DNA of 64,000 nt. Source: Vitrella brassicaformis CCMP3155. Its lineage: Eukaryota; Protista; Chromerida. The DNA is taken from NCBI GenBank assembly GCA_001179505.1, contig CDMY01000386.1, positions 1-64,000 on the forward strand, in the 5' to 3' direction. This document shows, in pieces, positions 883 to 51,687 of this stretch. Every line of letters begins with the position of its first letter. Position 1 is the stretch's first letter. A program made the translations under genes and the position numbers. The notes below the pieces were generated by a model. That model was not told where the DNA came from. It searched no databases and saw only the letters and a program-made list of their open reading frames with translations.

Positions 883-2580
883 TGGGGCAACGCCCACATC
901 CCACCTCGCCCACCGGACCGACAGAGGGAGGTGCGGTGGTGTGAGGCGTAAAGAGGGAAGGGGGAGATGAAGGAAGAGAGGATGATCGGAGCATGTGCGC
1001 TCTCATTAGTCAGTCGGGTCGGCCCGGATCCCGGTAAATGTGGACGATTGTGGGGGCAGACCGCCGGTCGTGATGCCTTCCTCGCCATCGATGATAGCCG
1101 CGCCTATGGCACTGATGCGTCACGGTCGCCGAATCTGAATGTCATATGGCAATCGGCGTCATCTTGATATCGATCCTGGCGGAGTGTCGGCCAACCAGAG
1201 ACCGTCATGGACGAAAAGTTGCCGCTGCCTGCGTTTTGCCTTTGTCAGGCGTGAGCAGGTCTTCGCGGGCTTCTGCGGAAGCGTGGACTGGAGACAGACA
1301 CTCGCTGTCGGTTGATGTGTGGTGTGAAAGTGTGCTACGACCAGGGACCGACAGTCGGTCGATATGCAGGGTGAGAGTTACGACCAGAGGCGGCTAGAGC
1401 TGTGCCGCCGTTTGCGATGCGGTGTGAGAGACGTGGTAAGGAGACAGGCTGATTGCCATAGCCGCCCCCCGGGAGGGCCATTGATGTCTGGCTGGAATGG
1501 GAGGGGACGTCGCCGTAATGTAATCAGACAAGAGGGCCCCAGCGTGCGAATTTGTACACAAGAGCTGAAGAGCGCGAGTGTCATGCGCAAGGAGATCCAG
1601 AACAGACTGCCCCTGCCAGGACATGAGAGCATCCGAAGCGGATAGGAGACCCGCTGGGCGAGATGTATTATGGCCGACTGCCACTGCCAGCCTGAGGGGA
1701 AAAGGGCAAAGGGCCGCCCTCGTGAGTGTCGTGACAAGGCTCGAGACGGCCGAATGTGCTGCTGTTGGCATACATAGGAGGCCGACGGGTCACCAAGCTT
1801 TGCGATATGCCAAGCGTAAGGGCTGTCACGCACTTGTGGAGACGACGGAAAGTGCGCGAGAGAAAAGGGTAGGCCAAAAAGGAGGGCCTGCCTTCACGCA
1901 ATGTCAACTTCGAGGGTTGCAAAGGACAGGGTTCCCCAGTCGGCCGGCAGAACACGAAGAGCGACCTTCCCGCGAATGTCGTGTGTGTGAGACCCCTCCT
2001 GGCCGCGAAGGCCTCATCGAGGAGTGAGTCCCGCAATGCCCCTGGCCGCGAAGGCCTTATGAGATGATAGAGAGTGTTAGTGTAGGACCCCGAAGATGAG
2101 AGTGCCGCACCTGCGCGAATGCGGTATGTGAGAGCTGAGATAAGCTGAGACAAGCTGAGACAAGGCAGAGTGCCTGTTTCTGGCAGAGAACGCGAATATC
2201 GTGCGTGAGAGTAACGCCGGGAAGGTAAGGAAAAAGACGTTGATCCATGCGAATGCCGTGCGTGAGCGTGAGCGTGAAAGAAGGCAGAGTACTAATGTCA
2301 GGGTACCCAAGAGACGAAAACGCTGATCACGTGAGCGTCATCGGGGGTGGCACAGGTGCACCAGGAGAGCCGCTGTTAGGGCGGAGAGGAGACAAAAGGG
2401 GGGGAGCTGCCCCACCACGAATGTCGTCCGGAGTGCCCAATGAGGCGGATAAGACGACGGGTGCCCATAATGTGGCACGTAGAAGAGACGGAAGGGCCGC
2501 TCAACGTCCGGCAGCCCAGAATAAGATAGATAAGACGACAAGTGCCAGTGCTATGGCACGTAGAAGAGACGGAAGCAGGT

Positions 2581-2910
2581 GCCGACGCCGTGGCACACAA
2601 GGAGGCGAGACGTGCCGATGCCGTGGCACACAGAGAGACGACAAGTGCCAATGCCGTGGCACACAGCGATGCGAGACGTGCCGATGCCGTGGCACACAGC
2701 GATGCGAGAAGTGCCGATGCCGTGGCACACAGAGATGCAAGAAGTGCCGACCTCGTGGCAGACAGAGATCCGAGACGTGCCGATGTCGTGGCACACAGAG
2801 ATGCGAGAAGTGCCGACGCCGTGGCACATAGAGAGACGAGACGCGCCGATGCCGTGGCACACAGAGAGACGACAGGTGCCGATGCAGTGGCACATAGAGA
2901 GAGACAAGAG
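2581..2910. repeat. 33-bp minisatellite, 10 units
   Basis: Unit approximates GCCGATGCCGTGGCACACAGAGATGCGAGAAGT. Unit 1 starts at 2581 and unit 10 at 2878. It reads as (ADAVAHRDARS)n in ORF 2542..3309. Confidence 0.9.
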
Positions 2911-3125
2911 CCGCTGCCGCGCGAATTGACGTACGCGAGGGCCCAAAGAGAGAGAGACAAGAGCCGCTGCCGCGCGAATCGACGTACGCGGGGGCACACA
3001 GAGAGAGAGAGACAAGAGCTGCCGCGCGAATCGACGTACGCGGGGGCACACAGAGAGAGAGAGACAAGAGCCGCTGCCACGCGAATCGACGTACGCGGGG
3101 GCACAGAGAGAGAGAGACAAGAGCC
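2901..3125. repeat. ~53-bp minisatellite, about 4 units
   Basis: GAGACAAGAGCCGCTGCCGCGCGAATCGACGTACGCGGGGGCACACA(GA)n with periods 53, 55, 52 and 53. Confidence 0.85.
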
Positions 3126-3708
3126 GTTGGAGGTAGTACTGCAGGCCGTTGTCGCATGCAACGTCTCGTCCAACGCGCGGGACGAGACCGTCACCGGTCG
3201 ACGTACGGGGACACTGAAGGTAAGACAGAGGAAGACACCTCATGCCTGCATCCATGCCTCTCCCTCATACAGAGAGGGGAAGGGCTGCTCGACCTCGTCC
3301 GGGAGCTGAGATAAGACGAGAAGTGCCAAGGCCGTGGCGCACAGACGAGAGAAAAAAGGGCCGCTATCGTGCGCGATGGCCCATATAAGACAGAGAATGC
3401 CGCGAAGGCGGTTGAAAGAATATTGAATATAAACGGAAGATACACACACACACACACACACACAAAACAACAACCACAACAACAACCCCACCCCCCCCAC
3501 CCCCCCAAGGTTAAGTAGATGCATGAAACGGGCGACGAAGTTCGTCTAAGCATCAGTTCGTATCAAGCAAATGAGGCGAAACAAGACATGCAGAAACAAC
3601 GGACAGCGCTCGTTGACTGCGAAAAACATGTCGCACACTGCAAACAAGCGCGAGACATGCAACATGACACGCACATTCAGAACCCAGGTCCAGCCAGCCA
3701 CCTTAAGT

Positions 3709-4458
3709 ACCCTCCCGTTTTACCTTACCGCGACTGGATGCGTGGTGCCGAACGGTCGGAGCCTCGAAGGTGGACGAGTTGCTGCTGAAGAAGGCTGGGG
3801 CTGGTAGCGGGGAACGAAGATCTCCGGCCCGGACGGTACATTTCGTTGGAAGAAGGCCGTGGGAAGAAGGATGAAGCCCCAAAGAGCGCCGCGGAAGCCC
3901 GAGGAGGCGATAAAGGGGGAGGGGCAAGTGCCGGTTGGCTGCGTCGGTGCCCCGATGCACCGGAAAGGCACGAAGAAGAGAGAAGTCCGCTGGGAGTCCA
4001 CTCGGCCGCAATTCGAGCCTCCGCCCAAGATCAAAAACATCATCACCACGAACATCACGCGTCCACGGTGTTGTGGCCGCCTCTCCAAAAGGCGTCGGTT
4101 GGTTATTGCGTCATCAGGAGGCGCGATCCACACGCGAGCTCGCAGCTCGCGTGTGGCAGATCCAGGATCCCGTGAGCCCTCACCGCTCACGCTCCGCTGG
4201 GGGATCCTACGGTACCGGACGAAACGTCCTCAAACCTCCGAGCCTCAAGCGCGCGAATTCTCGACAGCGGCCTCTTCCAAGCTTAGTTCGGGGAGTTCTG
4301 ATATGCGCTTATGGAAGTGGAAGGCGAGGAGCCTGAGGGCTCAAGAGAGTTCGACGATGAGCCTGATTGGAATGACGTCGATTTCAAGCCGTCCGACATC
4401 TTGGTGGCGGCCCTGCGCACCGAAAAGGGCATTGGTCTGCTGACGCTGCTGCCCGCCT
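3709..4458. repeat. Block reiterated at 4759-5211 (diverged) and 6801-7316 (apparently identical); includes a duplicate of the 5' end of the 7169 gene
   Basis: 3943-4458 matches 6801-7316 (offset 2858). 3709-~4170 matches 4759-5211 with several substitutions and indels. Confidence 0.85.
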
Positions 4459-4758
4459 NNNNNNNNNNNNNNNNNNNNNNNNNNNNNNNNNNNNNNNNNN
4501 NNNNNNNNNNNNNNNNNNNNNNNNNNNNNNNNNNNNNNNNNNNNNNNNNNNNNNNNNNNNNNNNNNNNNNNNNNNNNNNNNNNNNNNNNNNNNNNNNNNN
4601 NNNNNNNNNNNNNNNNNNNNNNNNNNNNNNNNNNNNNNNNNNNNNNNNNNNNNNNNNNNNNNNNNNNNNNNNNNNNNNNNNNNNNNNNNNNNNNNNNNNN
4701 NNNNNNNNNNNNNNNNNNNNNNNNNNNNNNNNNNNNNNNNNNNNNNNNNNNNNNNNNN
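4459..4758. other. Assembly gap (300 N)
   Basis: Run of N. Confidence 1.
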
Positions 4759-5211
4759 ACCCTCCCGTTCTACCTTACCGCGACTGGATGCGTGGTGCCG
4801 AAGGGTCGGAGCCTCGAAGGTGGACGAGTTGCTGCTGAAGAAGGCTGGGGCTGGTAGCGGGGAACGAAGATCTCCGGCCCGGACGGTACATTTCGTTGGA
4901 AGAAGGCCGTGGGAAGAAGGATGAAGCCCCAAAGGGCGCCGCGGAGGCCCGAGGTGGCGATAAAGGGGGAGGGGCAAGTGCCGGTTGGCTGCGTCGGTGC
5001 CCCGATGCACCGGAAAGGCGACGAAGAGGAGAGAAGTCCGCTGGGAGTCCACTCGGCCGCCGTTCGAGCCTCCGCCCAAGATCAAAAACATCATCACCAC
5101 GAACATCACGCGTCGACGGTGGTGTGGCCGCGTCCTCTCCAAAAGGCGTCATCAGGAGGCGCGATCCACACGCGAGCTCGCAGCTCGCGTGTGGCAGATC
5201 CAGGATCCCGT

Positions 5212-40290: not shown

Positions 40291-42271
40291 ATGAGGCAAG
40301 TGCAGAATCAGTCTGCTGATATGCTGCCGCCACCGAAGGCCCAGCCCGGCTTCCCCGGGCCGCTTCCCGCCTCTTCTGTCGATACGACGCTGCATGGGGG
40401 CCAGCAGATGTCCGCCGCGGCGCTTTTCGGTCCGGGACCGGCCGGCAAGGCGGCGCAGGTTAGCGATAAAGTGGAAGAGATGGTGGAGGAAGAGGTGCCT
40501 GGCGAATCGGACGAGACGACTGCGGGGAGCGAGGAGGGAGGTGAGCCAGCCCGTTAAGGCAGCAATATTGACATGGTGGATGAGAAGTTGGTGTGGCGGG
40601 GCTTGGGTGTGTGTGTGGTGTCGTTTTGCAATGCAGGTTATGCTGTGTTTGTTGATTCCAAGGATAAGTACCTGGCCGACTCGCCGCACTTCTTTCAGAA
40701 GAAGTTCGCGGACGGCAAGAACTACTGGGGCGTTGTCGCGTGGAAGGTCAGACTCCTCAGAAAGAGAGCACACCAAAAGTTGGAGAGAGAAGAAGGCAAT
40801 TTTTCCTTTTGGTGGGCTGTGTATACGTTGTGTGCAGGAGCCGCGTTCGTGGAAGGGGAAGGAGCAGTTGATGTACCAGGTCATCTATGCCGATGGCGAT
40901 GCAGAGCACATGGACAAGAGCGAACTCAAGTATGCAAATGCAATGCACACAATACAGCCGTCGCACCAAATGCATCTTCGTCCATTCTTCCCGTAGGCGT
41001 TGTTCGGAGGGCCGCTCCCGCTCGGGTGCCCGTCGCCGCGCCCCGTCCATGCCGCCCTCCCTGGCCAGCGTGTTCAAGGAGATCCGCGAGGCGGCCATCC
41101 AACTCAAGAAGGATGGCATCACAGGTGCGTCACAATACATGCACTCCTCCGATCGCCATTCCGTCTGTTTGTTGTCTGCTGTATGCATGTGCTCAGAGGA
41201 GGATCTCCTGCCGCTGAGGGAAGCCACGGCCGAGATCGAGATGAAGCGCAGACGCACACAGGCGTTCATGCCTGCCAGGCAGCACACCACCCGCAGCGCC
41301 GCCCGGCAGGGAGGGAGCCGCAAGAGGGGGCCCTCCGGCACACCCAAGAAGCAGCCCCGGACCAACAACACAGCCAAGCGGCAGAAACCCCCGCCCATTC
41401 CATCCGATCGCCGCGCACAGAACCGCCGCAGGGCAACCGATGCGGCCTCTGTGCCTCCCCGGTCAGACAGGGGGCGGGCGAGGGCGGCTGGTCGGAGGCG
41501 GCAGTGGGAGAAGGAGCTGCCGATGTCGTGTGACGATGTGTGTGTCGACGCGTGTGTGGATGGCGGCGGGGGGCAGGGGGACGGCGGCCTGAGCGTTGAG
41601 GTGGGCGTGTGTGGTGGTCGCGATGATACGTGTGGCAATGGGGGTGACTCCGAGAAGGACGGCCCTGGGGTGGTGGCTGTCGATCTGGAGGACCATTCTC
41701 AGGATCAGACGCCCGCCAGCAAAGCCGATGTGCTCGTAGCGAAGGGTGCACCCGTGCTGCAGGTGGGGTGGATACACATGGAATATACACACGGACAGAG
41801 AGACACCCACCACAGCTATTTGTGCATGTGGTTGGTGCAGGCCGGTGCGGGTTTGTCGATGCGGGCGGTGAATGCGTTTGTGGAGTACCACGGCGGCCAC
41901 CCCTTCAGCCAGTCCTTCTGGACGGTCGACGCGCTCATCGGCATGGCACAGCGGAGCGACCACCACAGGGTGAGCTCGTGGGGGTGACCACATACACACC
42001 ATGGACGCATCCATCCATCCATCCGTCCATGTGTGCGTGTGTGTGTGTACGTCTGTGTGCACTGCAGACACGTGAGATGATCGCTCAGCCCTGGTGCCCA
42101 CCGGAGAGGCGCGACTGGATTGTGTCCCGCCTGTTTGAGGTGCTGCTCGAGCACGACCGCATGATAAACACCCCCACCCACACCAACGACGCAGACACCG
42201 ACCACACATCCCCATGTAAAAAGAGGGATCCCAAAGCGGAGCCCTACATCGAGATGGAAGTCGACACGTGA
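40291..42271 (+). CDS. Hypothetical protein with a Tudor-like (PTM/DIR17-type) module and basic low-complexity region
   Basis: Spliced exons give FQKKFADGKNYWGVVAWK|EPRSWKGKEQLMYQVIYADGDAEHMDKSELK, resembling the 'KF..G.V....Y.V.YEDGD.E' Tudor-like pattern. The start codon is uncertain. Confidence 0.55.
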
Positions 42272-42779
42272 TTAGTTCACCAAGTACATATACATCGACG
42301 CGTCGCGTGCATGGACGGCTGCTTAATGGGACTGACGCAGGGCGGGAGTGGGGGTGAGGGAGGGGTGGGCATGCTTTGCTTTGCTTTTCGTGCCGCGCCA
42401 CAACGTACGTCACATTGATGGCCACAGGACACATGACTGACTACTTTGCCAACGTTCACTGATTGATGGATATAACACTGAATTGTCTCTCTCATGGCAT
42501 ACATCAACCCACGGGAGACGCCAAACCCAGAAACCGACTCACTGTCACACACACACCCCGTGGGTCATACACGCACACTCACACACGCCCTGCAGCCGCT
42601 GGAGTACCAACTTGACTTGAAACGAAAAACGCAGGGTAAGGATTTCTCTGTGCTTTTCTTGTTATGCTCGAGTCGCAGCTTGACCAGGAGACATGAAGGT
42701 CTCCCCAGGTCAAGAACCACACCACCTAGCAGACATACAGTACACTGACTGCACTTGATAGATCTGCTGTGTGCATGAC

Positions 42780-42867
42780 ACAGGGGCAGAAGGTTCGCTG
42801 TCCATCGGGCTGGGCCGCTTCCGGTAAGGGATTGCACAGCCAGCAGCCGTCACTCGCGGCCCCCTGT
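42780..42867 (-). promoter_or_regulatory. SECIS element (distal copy), form II, GUGA type
   Basis: Minus strand: GTGAC GGCTG ct GGCTGT gc AA TCC cttacc GGA a GCGGCC CAGCC CGAT, closed by helix I (ACAGGGG/CCCCTGT). Core UGAC at 42852-42849, AA at 42833-42832, CGAU at 42807-42804. Confidence 0.8.
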
Positions 42868-43181
42868 CGCCCGGTCACACACATCAGCCAAGATCGCATG
42901 ATCGTGCTTGTGGGGCTAGTGGTCCAATCAGCACATGTACGAAGCGAGTGACCGGTTGACGAAAAAGAAAAGGAGGAGAAGGGCAGCAAGGAACACCCCC
43001 CCACACCCACATATATGGAAGAGGAGCATACAAACCACGTACATGCCCTCACACCCACATGCAGACCAGCCAAGAGGGGAAGCAACGATATATACGGTGC
43101 AGATGCCTACGTATACGCGACAAATCCATCCACCTCCATCCACACACACGCAATGGACGGATGGGCTGTGTGGTGTGAGAG

Positions 43182-43268
43182 AGACAGGCAGCTCGCTATC
43201 ACTTCAGGCTGGGCCGCTCCCGCCAAGGGATTGCGCAGCCGTCAGCCGTCACTCGCGGCCCCCTGTCT
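43182..43268 (-). promoter_or_regulatory. SECIS element (proximal copy), form II, GUGA type
   Basis: Minus strand: GTGAC GGCTG ac GGCTGC gc AA TCCC ttggc GGGA GCGGCC CAGCC TGAA, with helix I AGACAGG/CCTGTCT. It lies ~230 nt after the stop codon of the UGA-containing gene. Confidence 0.85.
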
Positions 43269-43499
43269 ACGCTCACACGCACATATGGCAGCAGACATCA
43301 CATAGCATGTTGTCTATGTGAGTGAGTGGATGGGGTGTTGGGAGGTCGAGGTCAGATACAGAGATGCAGCAACGACGCAGCGAATGTATACCTTCCCACT
43401 GGCCTAAACTCATTCATTAGAAACGTACAAAAGCACACATGGCCCACCGTGTGCGGCCAGCAGCAGCTATGGCCTGTCTATATGAGTCGGTCTGCCTGT

Positions 43500-45344
43500 C
43501 TATGCGGTGATGACATTGTTCCGTAGGAAGGCATTGATATCCATCGACTCGTACAGAACGCCGCCGTCGGGCAGACCCAAAGCAGGCACCTGACTCACAC
43601 ACACACACACACGCACGCACCGGCGTTGCACATGTGAGTGTAACAGCACAGCACCTCCCACCTGTGTGAGTCCGCCCCTCTGTTTGAGTTGGTCCTTCTG
43701 CGACGGGTCGGCCTTGACGTCCACCAGCGGCAGCATCCCCTGCAGCCCCAAAGCACTCAGCTGGTCCAGCACATGGACGCAGAAGGGACACTGGGGCATG
43801 TAGAAGAGGCAGTAGCCCTCCTTCGACAGATCCTGCACACACGCAGCCAGCCAACCAACACACACACACAGACACACACACACAATCATCTCTTTCACTG
43901 TGTCGGTTCTGTGTGTGTCATCCCACTGCCCACCGTGGCGTTGACGTGCTTCATGTTTTCGACAAGCGGTGCGGGCGGCGCGTCCTTGCGAGAGGCCTTG
44001 ACCTCGCTGATGTAGTCGCGGCCCGTCTGCTTGCCCATCCACTGCAGCACGGCGTCAAACGAGTAGTCGAATGGACCAGGCCCACCTGCACCAACGACGT
44101 ACACACCGCACACACACCCATTCCCCCTTCATAAGTGTGTTTGTTTCCTCGATCTCTGGCCGACCGATGAATGCCAAAGTGCCATCGGGTTTGAGGACCA
44201 TGAGGCGGTCGAGCCAGGCGGCGTAGGCCACGCAGGCCTCGTCGTCCGAGCCGTCGATGAGCAGCTCGCCAGTGACGCCCTTGCCGGCGAAGAAGTCCAC
44301 CGCCAGCTTGGTCCGCTCGGCGAGGCTCGTGGTCTTCTTGACCCTCAGATTCCCATACACCGCCCACTCATCAGTCGGGTGGGCCTCCTGTGGCCACACA
44401 CACAGACATGGAGAGATGGCCGCAGCCGTCACCCACAACCTCTGCTGGTGTGTGGTGTGTGGTGTTGGTTACCCTCATGTAGATGGTGACGAACTTGGCG
44501 TCGTCCTTGAACAGCTGTTGGGCGACCATCAGGTCGTCCATAACAGCCGCAAACTGACATGCCAATCAATCAAGACACACACACAGGGGGAGAGAGGCAT
44601 GGATGGAGCCACTCTCAAGCAAACCGAGGAGGCGGATCGATCTCCTCTCTCTCGTGGCACTTACCGGGGGTCAGCTGCAGCTGCCGAAGTTGAGCACCAG
44701 GAACTTGGTGGCGTCGAGGAAGTCGTAGATGTGACGCTTCTCACCCTCAGTCGTGTACACCACACAATTGGGCGCCTTGCGGCCCTCTCTCAGGGTCCAG
44801 CGGCCACGCCTCCACACACAACACACCCAAACAGTGTCCGTCTCTCTCCCTCTCTCTCTCTCTCTCTCTGTGCCCACCTGTGAAGGCGCACATAGATCCA
44901 GATGCGGTGGTAGAAGGCGGGATTGGTCAGAGTGTGCCACATGGTCTCGCTGAGGTCATGTCGCAGCGGGTTGGGCTTCTCGGCGCCCAGCTCTCCGACG
45001 CCTTGTCGGTTGGTCATCGGGCCGGGCAGCCCGGTGACCTTGACGCCCAGCGCTCGCGAAGTGGGAGCATCCGGCTTTGTCGAAGCAGGAGCCTCCTTCC
45101 AGCCGAGCAGTCCCTTGATGAAACCCATAACGCACTTGAGAATGTAGCCCTGACAGCAGACAGACAAGGCACACACACCAACAAGCATGCATCTCATCCT
45201 CCCAATGGATGCTGCTGATCAGCTCAGAGACGTCGCCGACGGACTGACCTGTGTCAAGAAGCCGACCATAAAGGCAAACCTGATGACGTCCAATGGCAGG
45301 TACGCCACCTCCCACAGCTGCTCTGACACCGACGACGCCCTCAT
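43500..45344 (-). CDS. DIO: Iodothyronine deiodinase-like selenoprotein fused to a C-terminal glutaredoxin domain (409 aa, Sec at residue 169)
   Basis: Exons 45344-45249, 45149-44878, 44809-44665, 44553-44473, 44387-44165, 44085-43934, 43832-43662, 43589-43500 (1230 nt, all GT-AG, phase-consistent). Hydrophobic N-terminus; EGRKAPNCVV; KFLVLNFGSCS-U-PPF; TIYMREAHPTDEW; AYAAWLDRL; FIGGPGPFDY; then LFYMPQCPFCVHV...QVPAL...LYESMDI. Confidence 0.92.
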
Positions 45345-49307: not shown

Positions 49308-51687
49308 ATGGATGTGCATCAGGTGAGCCAGCAGCCGTGAGCAACGATCTGATGATTCTCCTCGTTGCTTCGCTACTCTGTGTGTGTGTGCAGGTCAGGG
49401 AGGATACGCGAGCAGTTGAACAGGGCCTGCGGCACCTGCAGGAGCTCAACACAGCGGTGCGCCTGCCTGCCTGCACAGAACAAGTCGTCGACTCTCTCTC
49501 TGCGTATGTGTCTTCCCTGCAGCTCGGCGCGTTGCGGTCTCACTTTGAGCAAGCGCAGCCTCCCAGTCTCACTGCACAGGTACGTCACACACACTGCCGC
49601 ATCGCTCGTGGAGTTTCCGTCTTTCGCAGGCGCCGTCGGCCAGCTCATTGGAGCTCCATGTGCAGCATGCCCTCGTCAGCTCCCACATCGCCACAGCACA
49701 GTCGCAGCTCACCCGCACACATGAGGACGTGTCGCGGGTGGTGGATGCACTCAAACCGATCCTGGCGGCCGCACCCAATCCCGCCACTCAGGATGATGCC
49801 GAGGTGCGCACAGCAGATGGCGACAGCACGACACTCTCTCTGTGTGTTAATCGCTGGTTCTTGTTGCTCTGTGTTTTGCAGGCCTCTGCAGTGAAGCGCC
49901 CGTCATTTCGTCTGACCCATCGAAGCGGCAACCCTCCACCTGTGAATGTGAATCAAGGACCGGTCAGACCGACACCATGACAGATCTGATACATCGAATC
50001 CTCTTGACCTTACTCTGATGTCATGTTGATTGTCACATCAGGCCCGTCGTCGGCTGTCGCGTGATGAGCTCTCCAACGTGTTCGGCCACCTGCAGCACTG
50101 GGAGCTGACGCGCCACCGCCGGCGTCTCGGCACGCCCCTCTTCCATCAGTCGGCCGCCAACTACACCCACCTGGTCATCGACTGTGAGGACGACACGGCG
50201 CGGCGCATGTGGGAGACCATGCCGCTGGCCGTGGCCCAGAGATGGGGGCAGAGGGCGACCAACGTCCGAGTGATCAAACACCGCTACCCCAAGTGGCATG
50301 ATCTATGGTGCCGCGGGACCTGGGCGGCATTAGTGGAAGGTCATGCGAGGGGCCGGGCGGCCATCGCAGACAAGAAACGACGAGAGAGGGAGGGAGGGGA
50401 GGGGGCAGCTGCTGCGGTGGCGCAAGACGATTACGGCCCCAGATCAGCTGCTCGCGTTGTGGAACGCGTGGTCGACTGGACGCGTCATCAGTCGGCTGAC
50501 GAGGGCACACTAGAGGTGCTGTCATTCGAGGCCGTCGAGCTCGATGACAGCATTGACATCCCCCACCCGCTCCCCTCATCTGATCTGCCGCCCGCCCCCT
50601 GCGTCCCGATCCCCATCCACCTGCCGGCACTCAAGACAGCCAACAGCATCCCGGGATACCTTGTGATGGCTCCTCAACGTCGCAACTGGCATATGCCCGC
50701 TCTCAGGGTCCTCACCATCGGAGAGCTGCCGGGAGGCGATGCCGGGTCGGTATGGCTGACGCACTGTAAAGCGATTGAGGTGCTGGACTTCAACGCCACT
50801 GGCTCTTATTCTGGTGCGTTTGTGGCCGACCTGCCGAGTGCGCTGCCGGCCGGATGCGGAGCACTCGAGGCGCTCCACACTCTGCGAGGCATCGCACTGC
50901 CGGCCTCCCCCGCCGACATCGACAAGCTGCGTGAGGTGATGGTGGCGAGGGGCGCCAGGCGGTCCATTCGCAACCTTCAGTTCATCTGGAACCATTGTGT
51001 GGTTGACACTGACAACACTGTGCAGCAGCTGAGGAAAATCGCGGAACTCAGGTGGGTCGGGACGGACCAGGCAGGCAGACAGACAGGACCGTGTATGTAT
51101 GTACTTCATGTGACTGTGGTCGTCTGTTTGTGCTGTTTCGTCAGGGACGCAGTGGCTGATCCCGCTGCCATGTCGGAGCCACTTGTTTGCGGCAACATGG
51201 GGTATGGGGGTCTCGCCATGGAGCTCCTCTCGCGCAGCAGCGACCACGTGTTCCAGAACGTCATCGCCGTGTTCGCCAAGACCATCACGACCGTGACCTA
51301 CTGCGGGCGTACCGAGGCCACCCCTGCATCGATCACGGACGACACCTTCCCCGCCGCCCACACCCTGCAGCTGCAAGACGATGCCCTCCCCAGTGAGGCC
51401 AAGAAGAAGAGGGCGGTCGAGATCGCCTCCCACATGGCCAACCTGCAGCGCATCGAGGCAGACGCCCATGTGGCTGTCAGTGAGGTGTGGCGTTTCGTTG
51501 CACGGCTGCAGCGGGCGCGGATTGGCAGAGGGCGAGAGGGCGGCCTGACGGTGCATTTGATGGTGAATTTTTACACACTGCTCGGCCACGTGCCTGCTTG
51601 CTTCTGTCTGGGGGGGCGGTCCGTCGAACAGCTGCGGGGCGTTGAGAAGATTGAAATCGATATCTGGGGTGAGGGATCTTCAACAGG

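What the first reader, a model, noticed from the sequence alone, without database searches (positions are those of the whole stretch)
42780..43268. Two tandem SECIS elements serving a single-Sec mRNA
Two ~88-nt elements ~400 nt apart both fit the eukaryotic form-II SECIS: GUGA-type core, G.A/A.G quartet, 11-bp helix II with a 2-nt bulge, unpaired AA and an apical mini-stem. Their differences fall in the bulge (AC/CT), apical loop (TTGGC/TTACC) and a C-G to U.G change, a pattern consistent with selection on structure. Dual SECIS is best known from multi-Sec SelenoP, yet this gene has one UGA. It may boost Sec insertion or give alternative polyadenylation isoforms different recoding efficiency.
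Basis: partly seen in the sequence, partly recalled or inferred. Interest (0 to 1): 0.85.

Follow-up and report, generated by a model that had tools for sequence, protein, structure and literature searches.

The report
Two SECIS hairpins, one selenocysteine codon
An alga's gene for a selenium-containing enzyme carries two near-identical copies of the RNA hairpin that tells the ribosome to read UGA as selenocysteine; both sit in one messenger RNA, a rare arrangement that most likely comes from an old local duplication.

Summary
Two ~85-nt hairpins on the minus strand (43268-43182 and 42868-42783) both fold as type II SECIS elements. Each has a GUGA core, an 11-bp helix II with a 2-nt bulge, an unpaired AA and a mini-stem. 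A home-made SECIS descriptor hits only these two places in 128 kb.

They lie 232 and 631 nt after the stop codon of an intact 8-exon deiodinase-glutaredoxin gene of Vitrella brassicaformis (CEM08771.1). That gene has exactly one in-frame TGA. RNA contigs from two runs run without a mismatch from inside copy A, across copy B, to about 42442, so both copies are transcribed together.

A recent paralog (CEM27681.1, dS 0.05) and a distant paralog each have only one SECIS. Homology with the recent paralog stops between A and B, and B lacks A's own changes, so B is older than that gene duplication. The SECIS core differs 13% between A and B, against 36% in the adjoining homologous flank. This points to constraint on both copies.

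Weak points:
- Rfam's SECIS model scores neither copy, but it also finds nothing in a control mRNA.
- B folds less reliably than A.
- Function was not tested.

Two predicted SECIS on a one-Sec gene have been reported before (Ciona SelW1, human Sep15). Interest is modest.

The parts
43182..43268 (-). SECIS copy A (upstream, 232 nt after the stop). GUGA is at 43252-43249, helix II is 11 bp with an AC bulge, AA is at 43232-43231, the mini-stem is UCCC/GGGA, and the 3' quartet side is UGAA at 43206-43203.
   Evidence: In a fold of the whole 1058-nt UTR, the helix II pair probabilities are 0.98-1.0.
42783..42868 (-). SECIS copy B (downstream, 631 nt after the stop). GUGA is at 42853-42850, helix II is 11 bp with a CU bulge and one U-G pair, AA is at 42833-42832, the mini-stem is 3 bp (UCC/GGA), and the 3' quartet side is CGAU at 42807-42804.
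   Evidence: In the whole-UTR fold, the helix II pair probabilities are only 0.43-0.65.
42869..43181 (-). Spacer of about 320 nt between the two hairpins. It shows no recognisable coding remnant. Homology with the paralog locus L001 ends inside it, at about 43136-43106.
42442..43499 (-). Inferred 3' UTR of about 1058 nt that holds both SECIS copies.
   Evidence: RNA-run contigs X1 (42442-43260) and X8 (42457-43260) match with 0 mismatches. Transcript contig L008 carries the window-type last exon and UTR down to 43403. The next annotated gene is convergent and ends at 42271.
44671..44673 (-). The single in-frame TGA (codon 169), at the deiodinase active site FGSCS-U-PPF.
   Evidence: The same context is present in paralog L001 and in the distant paralog mRNA L002, as FGSCS*GPF.
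43500..45344 (-). Deiodinase-glutaredoxin gene (CEM08771.1). Its 8 exons are 45344-45249, 45149-44878, 44809-44665, 44553-44473, 44387-44165, 44085-43934, 43832-43662 and 43589-43500. All introns are GT-AG.
   Evidence: The splice joints appear in a spliced RNA contig. The identity with P0030/CEM08771.1 comes.

Best explanation
Both elements are paralogous type II SECIS hairpins with a guanine before the UGA/GA quartet. They lie in one ~1.06-kb 3' UTR of the Vitrella brassicaformis deiodinase-glutaredoxin selenoprotein mRNA.

They arose by an old local duplication of at least ~140 nt. That duplication predates the recent duplication of the whole gene.

Either hairpin can present the kink-turn core to the SECIS-binding protein, and so bring the Sec-specific elongation factor and Sec-tRNA to the single UGA at codon 169.

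Copy A is the thermodynamically robust, probably dominant element. Copy B has been kept structurally intact and acts as a second, redundant or additive recruitment site.

Shown here: the sequence and fold of both copies, that they are co-transcribed, that there is a single UGA, their evolutionary relations, and the uneven divergence between core and flank.

Inferred: protein binding, and that both copies actually support recoding.
For: 1. SECIS anatomy is present in both copies, and they are the only strict-descriptor hits in the window.
2. The gene is intact, with one TGA at a known Sec position. dN/dS against its paralog is 0.43 downstream of the TGA, so the TGA is read through and a SECIS is needed.
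3. RNA contigs from two independent runs cover B, the spacer and most of A with 0 mismatches, and stop about 340 nt past B. Depth is ~0 further downstream. The window-type last exon and UTR start appear in a spliced transcript contig.
4. The A-B core (75 nt) has 10 differences (13%). The homologous 3' flank has 21 of 59 (36%), Fisher p=0.0036, and the flank homology itself is significant (2 of 2000 shuffles).
5. Among A, B and the paralog's SECIS, the variable columns are 8/56 paired, 2/11 core and 9/20 unpaired (p=0.011). Helix II has 1 change in 22 positions, and that change is C-G to U-G.
6. B carries 7 states of its own, against 3 each for A and L. It shares CGAU with L rather than A's UGAA, so it was not copied from present-day A and is older than the dS=0.05 gene duplication.
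7. A guanine before the quartet occurs in the functional nematode trxr-1 SECIS (PMC4114682). It is also seen in the independent SECIS of the distant Vitrella paralog.
Against: - Rfam SECIS_1 gives no hit for either copy, even at E<=10.
- B has C where the published core consensus UGAN/KGAW (PMC3753652) wants G or U. It also has a shorter mini-stem, a weaker helix I, and only ~50% helix II probability in the full-UTR fold.
- The recent paralog and the distant paralog each manage with one SECIS, so a second copy is not required.
- No compensatory double substitutions were found.
- The test on B's own changes is only marginal (p about 0.06).
- Contigs cannot show whether some transcripts end between A and B.
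- The 143 nt between 43403 and 43260 are bridged only by DNA-run contigs and by thin RNA depth.
Confidence: 0.55

Rival explanations
1. Only copy A works. Copy B is a slowly decaying relic of an old duplication that is carried passively in the long 3' UTR.
For: - B deviates from the KGAW consensus (it has CGAU). It has a 3-bp mini-stem, a C.A break in helix I, and only 0.43-0.65 helix II probability against >=0.98 for A.
- B has 7 lineage-specific changes against 3 for A.
- Paralogs function with one SECIS.
- In human Sep15, one of the two predicted SECIS is reported to be non-functional (PMC2874816).
Against: - The sole SECIS of the expressed recent paralog also has CGAU, so that deviation is tolerated.
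- B's core is far better preserved than its homologous flank (13% against 36%).
- None of B's own changes touches GUGA, GA, AA or breaks helix II.
Confidence: 0.3
2. The two copies are not on the same mature mRNA. The main poly(A) site lies between them, and the RNA over 42442-43260 is a separate or read-through transcript.
For: - Contigs have no strand and drop rare forms.
- The RNA contig starts inside A, at 43260, and is not physically joined to the coding exons in any single record.
- A convergent gene ends at 42271.
Against: - The contig break at 43260 is explained by the 37 nt that A shares exactly with the paralog's SECIS, which makes a branch in the assembly graph.
- One contig runs from inside A through B in two runs.
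- RNA depth is ~0 between 42271 and 42442, and the convergent gene is barely covered (depth 4.5 against 73).
- The paralog's mRNA also has a ~1-kb 3' UTR.
Confidence: 0.08
3. Neither hairpin is a SECIS. They are a duplicated GC-rich hairpin with some other role or none, and the TGA is a true stop or lies in an intron, as the public annotation has it.
For: - Rfam SECIS_1 finds neither copy.
- The public gene models splice out the TGA.
Against: - A spliced RNA contig and MMETSP transcripts keep the TGA-bearing exon end in frame.
- The TGA sits exactly at the deiodinase Sec position in three paralogs.
- The sequence downstream of the TGA is conserved as protein.
- No other SECIS candidate exists in the UTR.
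- Rfam also fails on the control mRNA.
Confidence: 0.04

Closest known systems
Selenoprotein P 3' UTR (two SECIS elements, vertebrates)
   Same: Two SECIS hairpins lie in one 3' UTR exon a few hundred nt apart. The spacing here is ~320-400 nt, and the vertebrate SelP average is 334 nt (PMC3316567).
   Different: SelP has many UGA codons, and its two SECIS differ in sequence and in task (PMC5133445). Here there is one UGA, and the two copies are near-identical type II paralogs.
Ciona intestinalis SelW1 and human Sep15 (one Sec, two predicted SECIS)
   Same: These are single-Sec genes with two SECIS-like hairpins in the 3' UTR. In Ciona both are type II (PMC2874816).
   Different: Those cases were called with SECISearch, and for Sep15 the upstream copy is reported to be non-functional. 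Here the two copies are clear duplicates of each other. They come with RNA evidence, and with a paralog that carries only one copy as a natural comparison.
Nematode trxr-1 SECIS, with a guanine before the quartet
   Same: [quoted passage not shown]
   Different: The nematode element is type I. The Vitrella elements are type II with a mini-stem.
Eukaryotic type II SECIS consensus (SECISearch3: core UGAN/KGAW, unpaired A's, extra helix)
   Same: Copy A fits fully (UGAC/UGAA). Both copies have the GA/AG core, the AA and the extra helix (PMC3753652).
   Different: Copy B and the paralog's SECIS have C at the K position. Rfam's covariance model does not score any of them.

Membership tests
Eukaryotic SECIS element (type II) | Lies in the 3' UTR of an mRNA with an in-frame UGA at a Sec position. 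| tested here: met
   There is one TGA, at the deiodinase active site. The hairpins lie 232 and 631 nt after the stop, inside RNA-covered sequence.
Eukaryotic SECIS element (type II) | Kink-turn core with tandem G.A/A.G pairs; consensus UGAN / KGAW (PMC3753652). | tested here: met
   Copy A has (G)UGAC ... UGAA, which fits fully. Only the sequence was tested, not the 3D pairing.
Eukaryotic SECIS element (type II) | The same core consensus, applied to copy B. | tested here: inconclusive
   Copy B has (G)UGAC ... CGAU. GA and W fit, but K is C. The sole SECIS of the expressed paralog has the same CGAU.
Eukaryotic SECIS element (type II) | Helix II of limited length above the core, then conserved unpaired A's on the 5' side. 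| tested here: met
   There are 11 bp plus a 2-nt bulge, then GCAA unpaired, in A, B and L.
Eukaryotic SECIS element (type II) | An additional mini-helix above the A's (type II). | tested here: met
   The mini-helix is 4 bp in A, 3 bp in B, and 3-4 bp in L.
Eukaryotic SECIS element (type II) | Recognised by a curated covariance model. | tested here: not met
   Rfam 15 gives no SECIS hit at gathering score or at E<=10, even on 88 nt. The same search finds none in the 3' UTR of the distant paralog's one-UGA mRNA, so the model seems insensitive here. SECISearch3 was not available.
Eukaryotic SECIS element (type II) | Binds the SECIS-binding protein and supports UGA-to-Sec recoding. | not testable with these tools
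   This needs a reporter assay, a binding assay or 75Se labelling.
SelenoP-type dual-SECIS 3' UTR | Two SECIS on one mRNA. | tested here: met
   A single RNA contig spans from inside A through B in two runs.
SelenoP-type dual-SECIS 3' UTR | Multiple in-frame UGA codons served by the two SECIS. | tested here: not met
   There is only one TGA in the 409-codon reading frame.
SelenoP-type dual-SECIS 3' UTR | The two SECIS are distinct in sequence and specialised in function. | tested here: not met
   The copies are 87% identical duplicates of the same form. Functional specialisation was not tested.

The most novel reading that the evidence does not exclude
The two hairpins act together, and SECIS dosage sets how efficiently, or how selenium-dependently, the single UGA is recoded. 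The older two-SECIS gene and its recent one-SECIS paralog would then differ in selenoprotein output. This would make the pair a natural experiment on SECIS copy number, possibly modulated by a poly(A) choice between A and B.
Probability: 0.2. Interest if true: 0.55.

Novelty: new member of a known kind. Interest (0 to 1): 0.4.

Why it matters
Outside selenoprotein P, one SECIS per mRNA is the rule. Only a few computational exceptions are on record.

This case has:
- two clearly related copies;
- RNA evidence that they share one transcript;
- signs that both have been kept intact;
- sister genes with a single copy.

That gives a simple test system for whether a second SECIS raises Sec insertion. 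It also flags that both Vitrella gene models (CEM08771.1 and CEM27681.1) hide their selenocysteine. The finding adds to the picture that chromerid SECIS elements commonly use GUGA, which standard models miss.

Tried and rejected
- **Rfam.** A gathering scan of the whole window, and E<=10 scans of 2 kb, 531 nt and 88 nt, gave no SECIS family hit, only chance matches. The control on the L002 3' UTR was also blank.
- **Relaxed SECIS descriptor.** It is not specific: 3 hits in the window against 1-8 in shuffles, so only the strict version is used.
- **Metagenome scans.** The B-specific 31-mer found nothing. The 18-mer shared by A, B and L gave 44 hits, all chance matches in unrelated contigs with at most 40/75 identity. 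No relatives from other organisms were obtained.
- **Exact look-up of the window-type C-terminal 234-aa ORF in transcript assemblies.** It is not on record. Assemblies collapse the two paralogs onto the L type.
- **An apparent extra SECIS-like match on the other strand of L001 (near 2137).** It is only an 11-mer at an exon-intron border.
- **A second small selenoprotein ORF between A and B.** The ORFs there are low-complexity and have no support. This was not pursued.
- **A-5'/B-3' cross-pairing.** Its probability in the UTR ensemble is 0.
- **Literature searches.** Searches for Vitrella or Chromera together with SECIS or selenoprotein returned no papers.
- **A covariance model from A, B and L.** I did not build one, because three near-identical sequences would only find themselves again.

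Full report
**What is there**

Two stretches on the minus strand, 43268-43182 (copy A) and 42868-42783 (copy B), share a 75-nt core, GACAGGGGGCCGCGAGUGACGGCUG...AGCGA. Copy A folds unconstrained into a long hairpin (-47.5 kcal/mol, z -2.76). Copy B does the same once a few more flanking bases are included (-38.8 kcal/mol).

Both copies have the following, in order:
- Helix I.
- An internal loop holding GUGA on the 5' side and GA on the 3' side.
- Helix II of 11 bp, interrupted by a 2-nt bulge.
- An unpaired GCAA.
- A mini-stem of 4 bp in A and 3 bp in B.
- A 5-6 nt loop.

That is the type II SECIS layout described in PMC3753652.

I wrote a strict descriptor: RUGAN, a 9-14 bp helix II with at most one irregularity, an unpaired AA, NGAN, and a helix I. 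It hits only these two sites on both strands of the window. Fifteen dinucleotide shuffles gave a mean of 0.27 hits. I wrote the descriptor after seeing the elements, so it shows specificity rather than independent discovery.

**The gene they serve**

The minus-strand gene 45344-43500 has eight exons with GT-AG introns and a 409-codon frame. It has exactly one in-frame TGA (44673-44671), at FGSCS-U-PPF, the deiodinase active site. A C-terminal CPFC glutaredoxin/GST_N domain follows.

It is CEM08771.1 of Vitrella brassicaformis CCMP3155, on contig CDMY01000386.1 at the same coordinates as the window. The public model splices out the 11 residues around the Sec.

A spliced RNA contig and MMETSP transcripts keep that segment in frame.

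**Are both on the mRNA?**

In two runs that behave as RNA, a single contig matches the window with 0 mismatches. These runs show a spliced contig, or coverage limited to transcribed blocks. The contig spans 43260 to 42442 in X1 and 43260 to 42457 in X8. It therefore runs from inside A, across the spacer and B, to about 340 nt beyond B. Depth is about zero further downstream.

The break at 43260 is where A becomes identical for 37 nt to the paralog's SECIS, which makes a branch point in a k-mer assembly.

Transcript contig L008 carries the window-type last exon, spliced, and the UTR down to 43403. The 143 nt in between are tiled by DNA-run contigs and by thin RNA depth.

The next annotated gene is convergent. 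It ends at 42271 and is barely covered.

The simplest reading is one ~1058-nt 3' UTR with both hairpins. Contigs cannot show minor poly(A) sites between A and B.

**History**

A second locus in the same assembly (L001, CEM27681.1) is ~90% identical in DNA over window 46725-43136. Between the two genes, dS is 0.054 and dN/dS is 0.34.

That paralog has one SECIS (L). Its full-length transcript L005 has a ~1-kb UTR with only that one.

Homology ends at about 43136-43106, between A and B.

In the 75-nt core, A-L differ at 6 columns, A-B at 10 and B-L at 10. B has 7 states of its own, and A and L have 3 each. B shares CGAU with L, where A has UGAA plus an extra base. So B was not copied from present-day A, and it is older than the gene duplication.

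The A-B homology extends into the flanks over about 140 nt. The 3' flank similarity was reached by only 2 of 2000 shuffles. That flank is only 64% identical, against 87% for the core (Fisher p=0.0036).

A third, distant Vitrella paralog (P0004, 44% identical; transcripts L002-L004) has FGSCS-U-GPF. It has its own single GUGA-type type II SECIS, different in sequence, 424 nt after the stop.

**Evidence on selection**

Among A, B and L, the variable columns are 8/56 paired (mostly the 3' strand of helix I), 2/11 core (both at the N positions) and 9/20 unpaired (p=0.011). Helix II has a single change, C-G to U-G.

There are no compensatory double changes. A test on B's seven own changes sparing the critical positions gives p about 0.06. 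So constraint on B is likely but not proven.

In a fold of the whole UTR, A's helix II has probability >=0.98 and B's has 0.43-0.65. A looks like the stronger element.

**Evidence against**

Rfam 15 gives no SECIS hit at any setting. The same search finds nothing in the distant paralog's 3' UTR, where a SECIS must exist. I therefore treat the model as insensitive to these GUGA-type elements rather than as a rejection. SECISearch3 was not available.

A guanine before the quartet is documented in the functional nematode trxr-1 SECIS (PMC4114682). Other first-stage notes on this genome list several GUGA-core SECIS (I did not check these).

B's C at the K position departs from UGAN/KGAW, but the paralog's only SECIS has the same base.

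**Comparison and verdict**

Two SECIS in one UTR is the hallmark of selenoprotein P, which has many UGAs and two dissimilar SECIS (PMC3316567, PMC5133445).

For one-Sec genes, Ciona SelW1 and human Sep15 have been reported with two predicted SECIS, and the upstream Sep15 copy is reported to be inactive (PMC2874816).

The present case is a further, better-documented instance. The two copies are duplicated, co-transcribed and apparently both conserved, and sister genes carry one copy.

Most likely both are competent and redundant or additive, with A dominant (0.55). The main rival is that B is a relic (0.3). This is a new member of a known kind, of modest interest.

The scan had noted this same stretch before from an overlapping window (s1-199373).

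Noticed in passing
window 44665-44697 and L001 3644-3676: Both public gene models (CEM08771.1 and CEM27681.1, each 398 aa) treat the 33 nt that encode VLNFGSCS-U-PP as intron. This hides the selenocysteine. The true products are 409 residues.
   Followed up: yes
window 44211-44213: The window paralog has Leu (AAWLDRL) where the recent paralog, the distant paralog and bacterial relatives all have Pro (AWP[DN]R). This is a change at a strongly conserved position, and it might weaken this copy of the enzyme.
   Followed up: partly
L002 1-1137 and 1561-1607 (also L003, L004): A third Vitrella deiodinase-glutaredoxin selenoprotein is 44% identical, with active site FGSCS-U-GPF. It has one GUGA-type type II SECIS 424 nt after the stop. 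The same transcript contig goes on to a further 299-aa ORF (1797-2696) of unknown nature.
   Followed up: partly
window 43459-43502: Relative to the paralog, the window has a 22-nt tandem duplication that starts at the stop codon (TAGACAGGC...). It also has a 14-nt insertion at about 43436-43449. The motif TAGACAGG recurs at the 5' foot of SECIS A.
   Followed up: no
window 42005-42050: A (CCAT)n/(GT)n microsatellite gathers depths of 1300-5000 in DNA runs, against 12-70 nearby. It also produces many false 'joints' in the read layout.
   Followed up: no
window 49900-50387 and L001 6568-7055: A second segment is shared by the two loci (88% identical over 493 nt). Its orientation is opposite to that of the gene segment. 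It may be a dispersed repeat or part of a more complex rearrangement.
   Followed up: no
window 40291-42271 (+): A convergent annotated gene (492 aa, no Pfam hit) ends 170 nt from the inferred 3' end of the selenoprotein mRNA. It is almost silent in the RNA runs examined.
   Followed up: no
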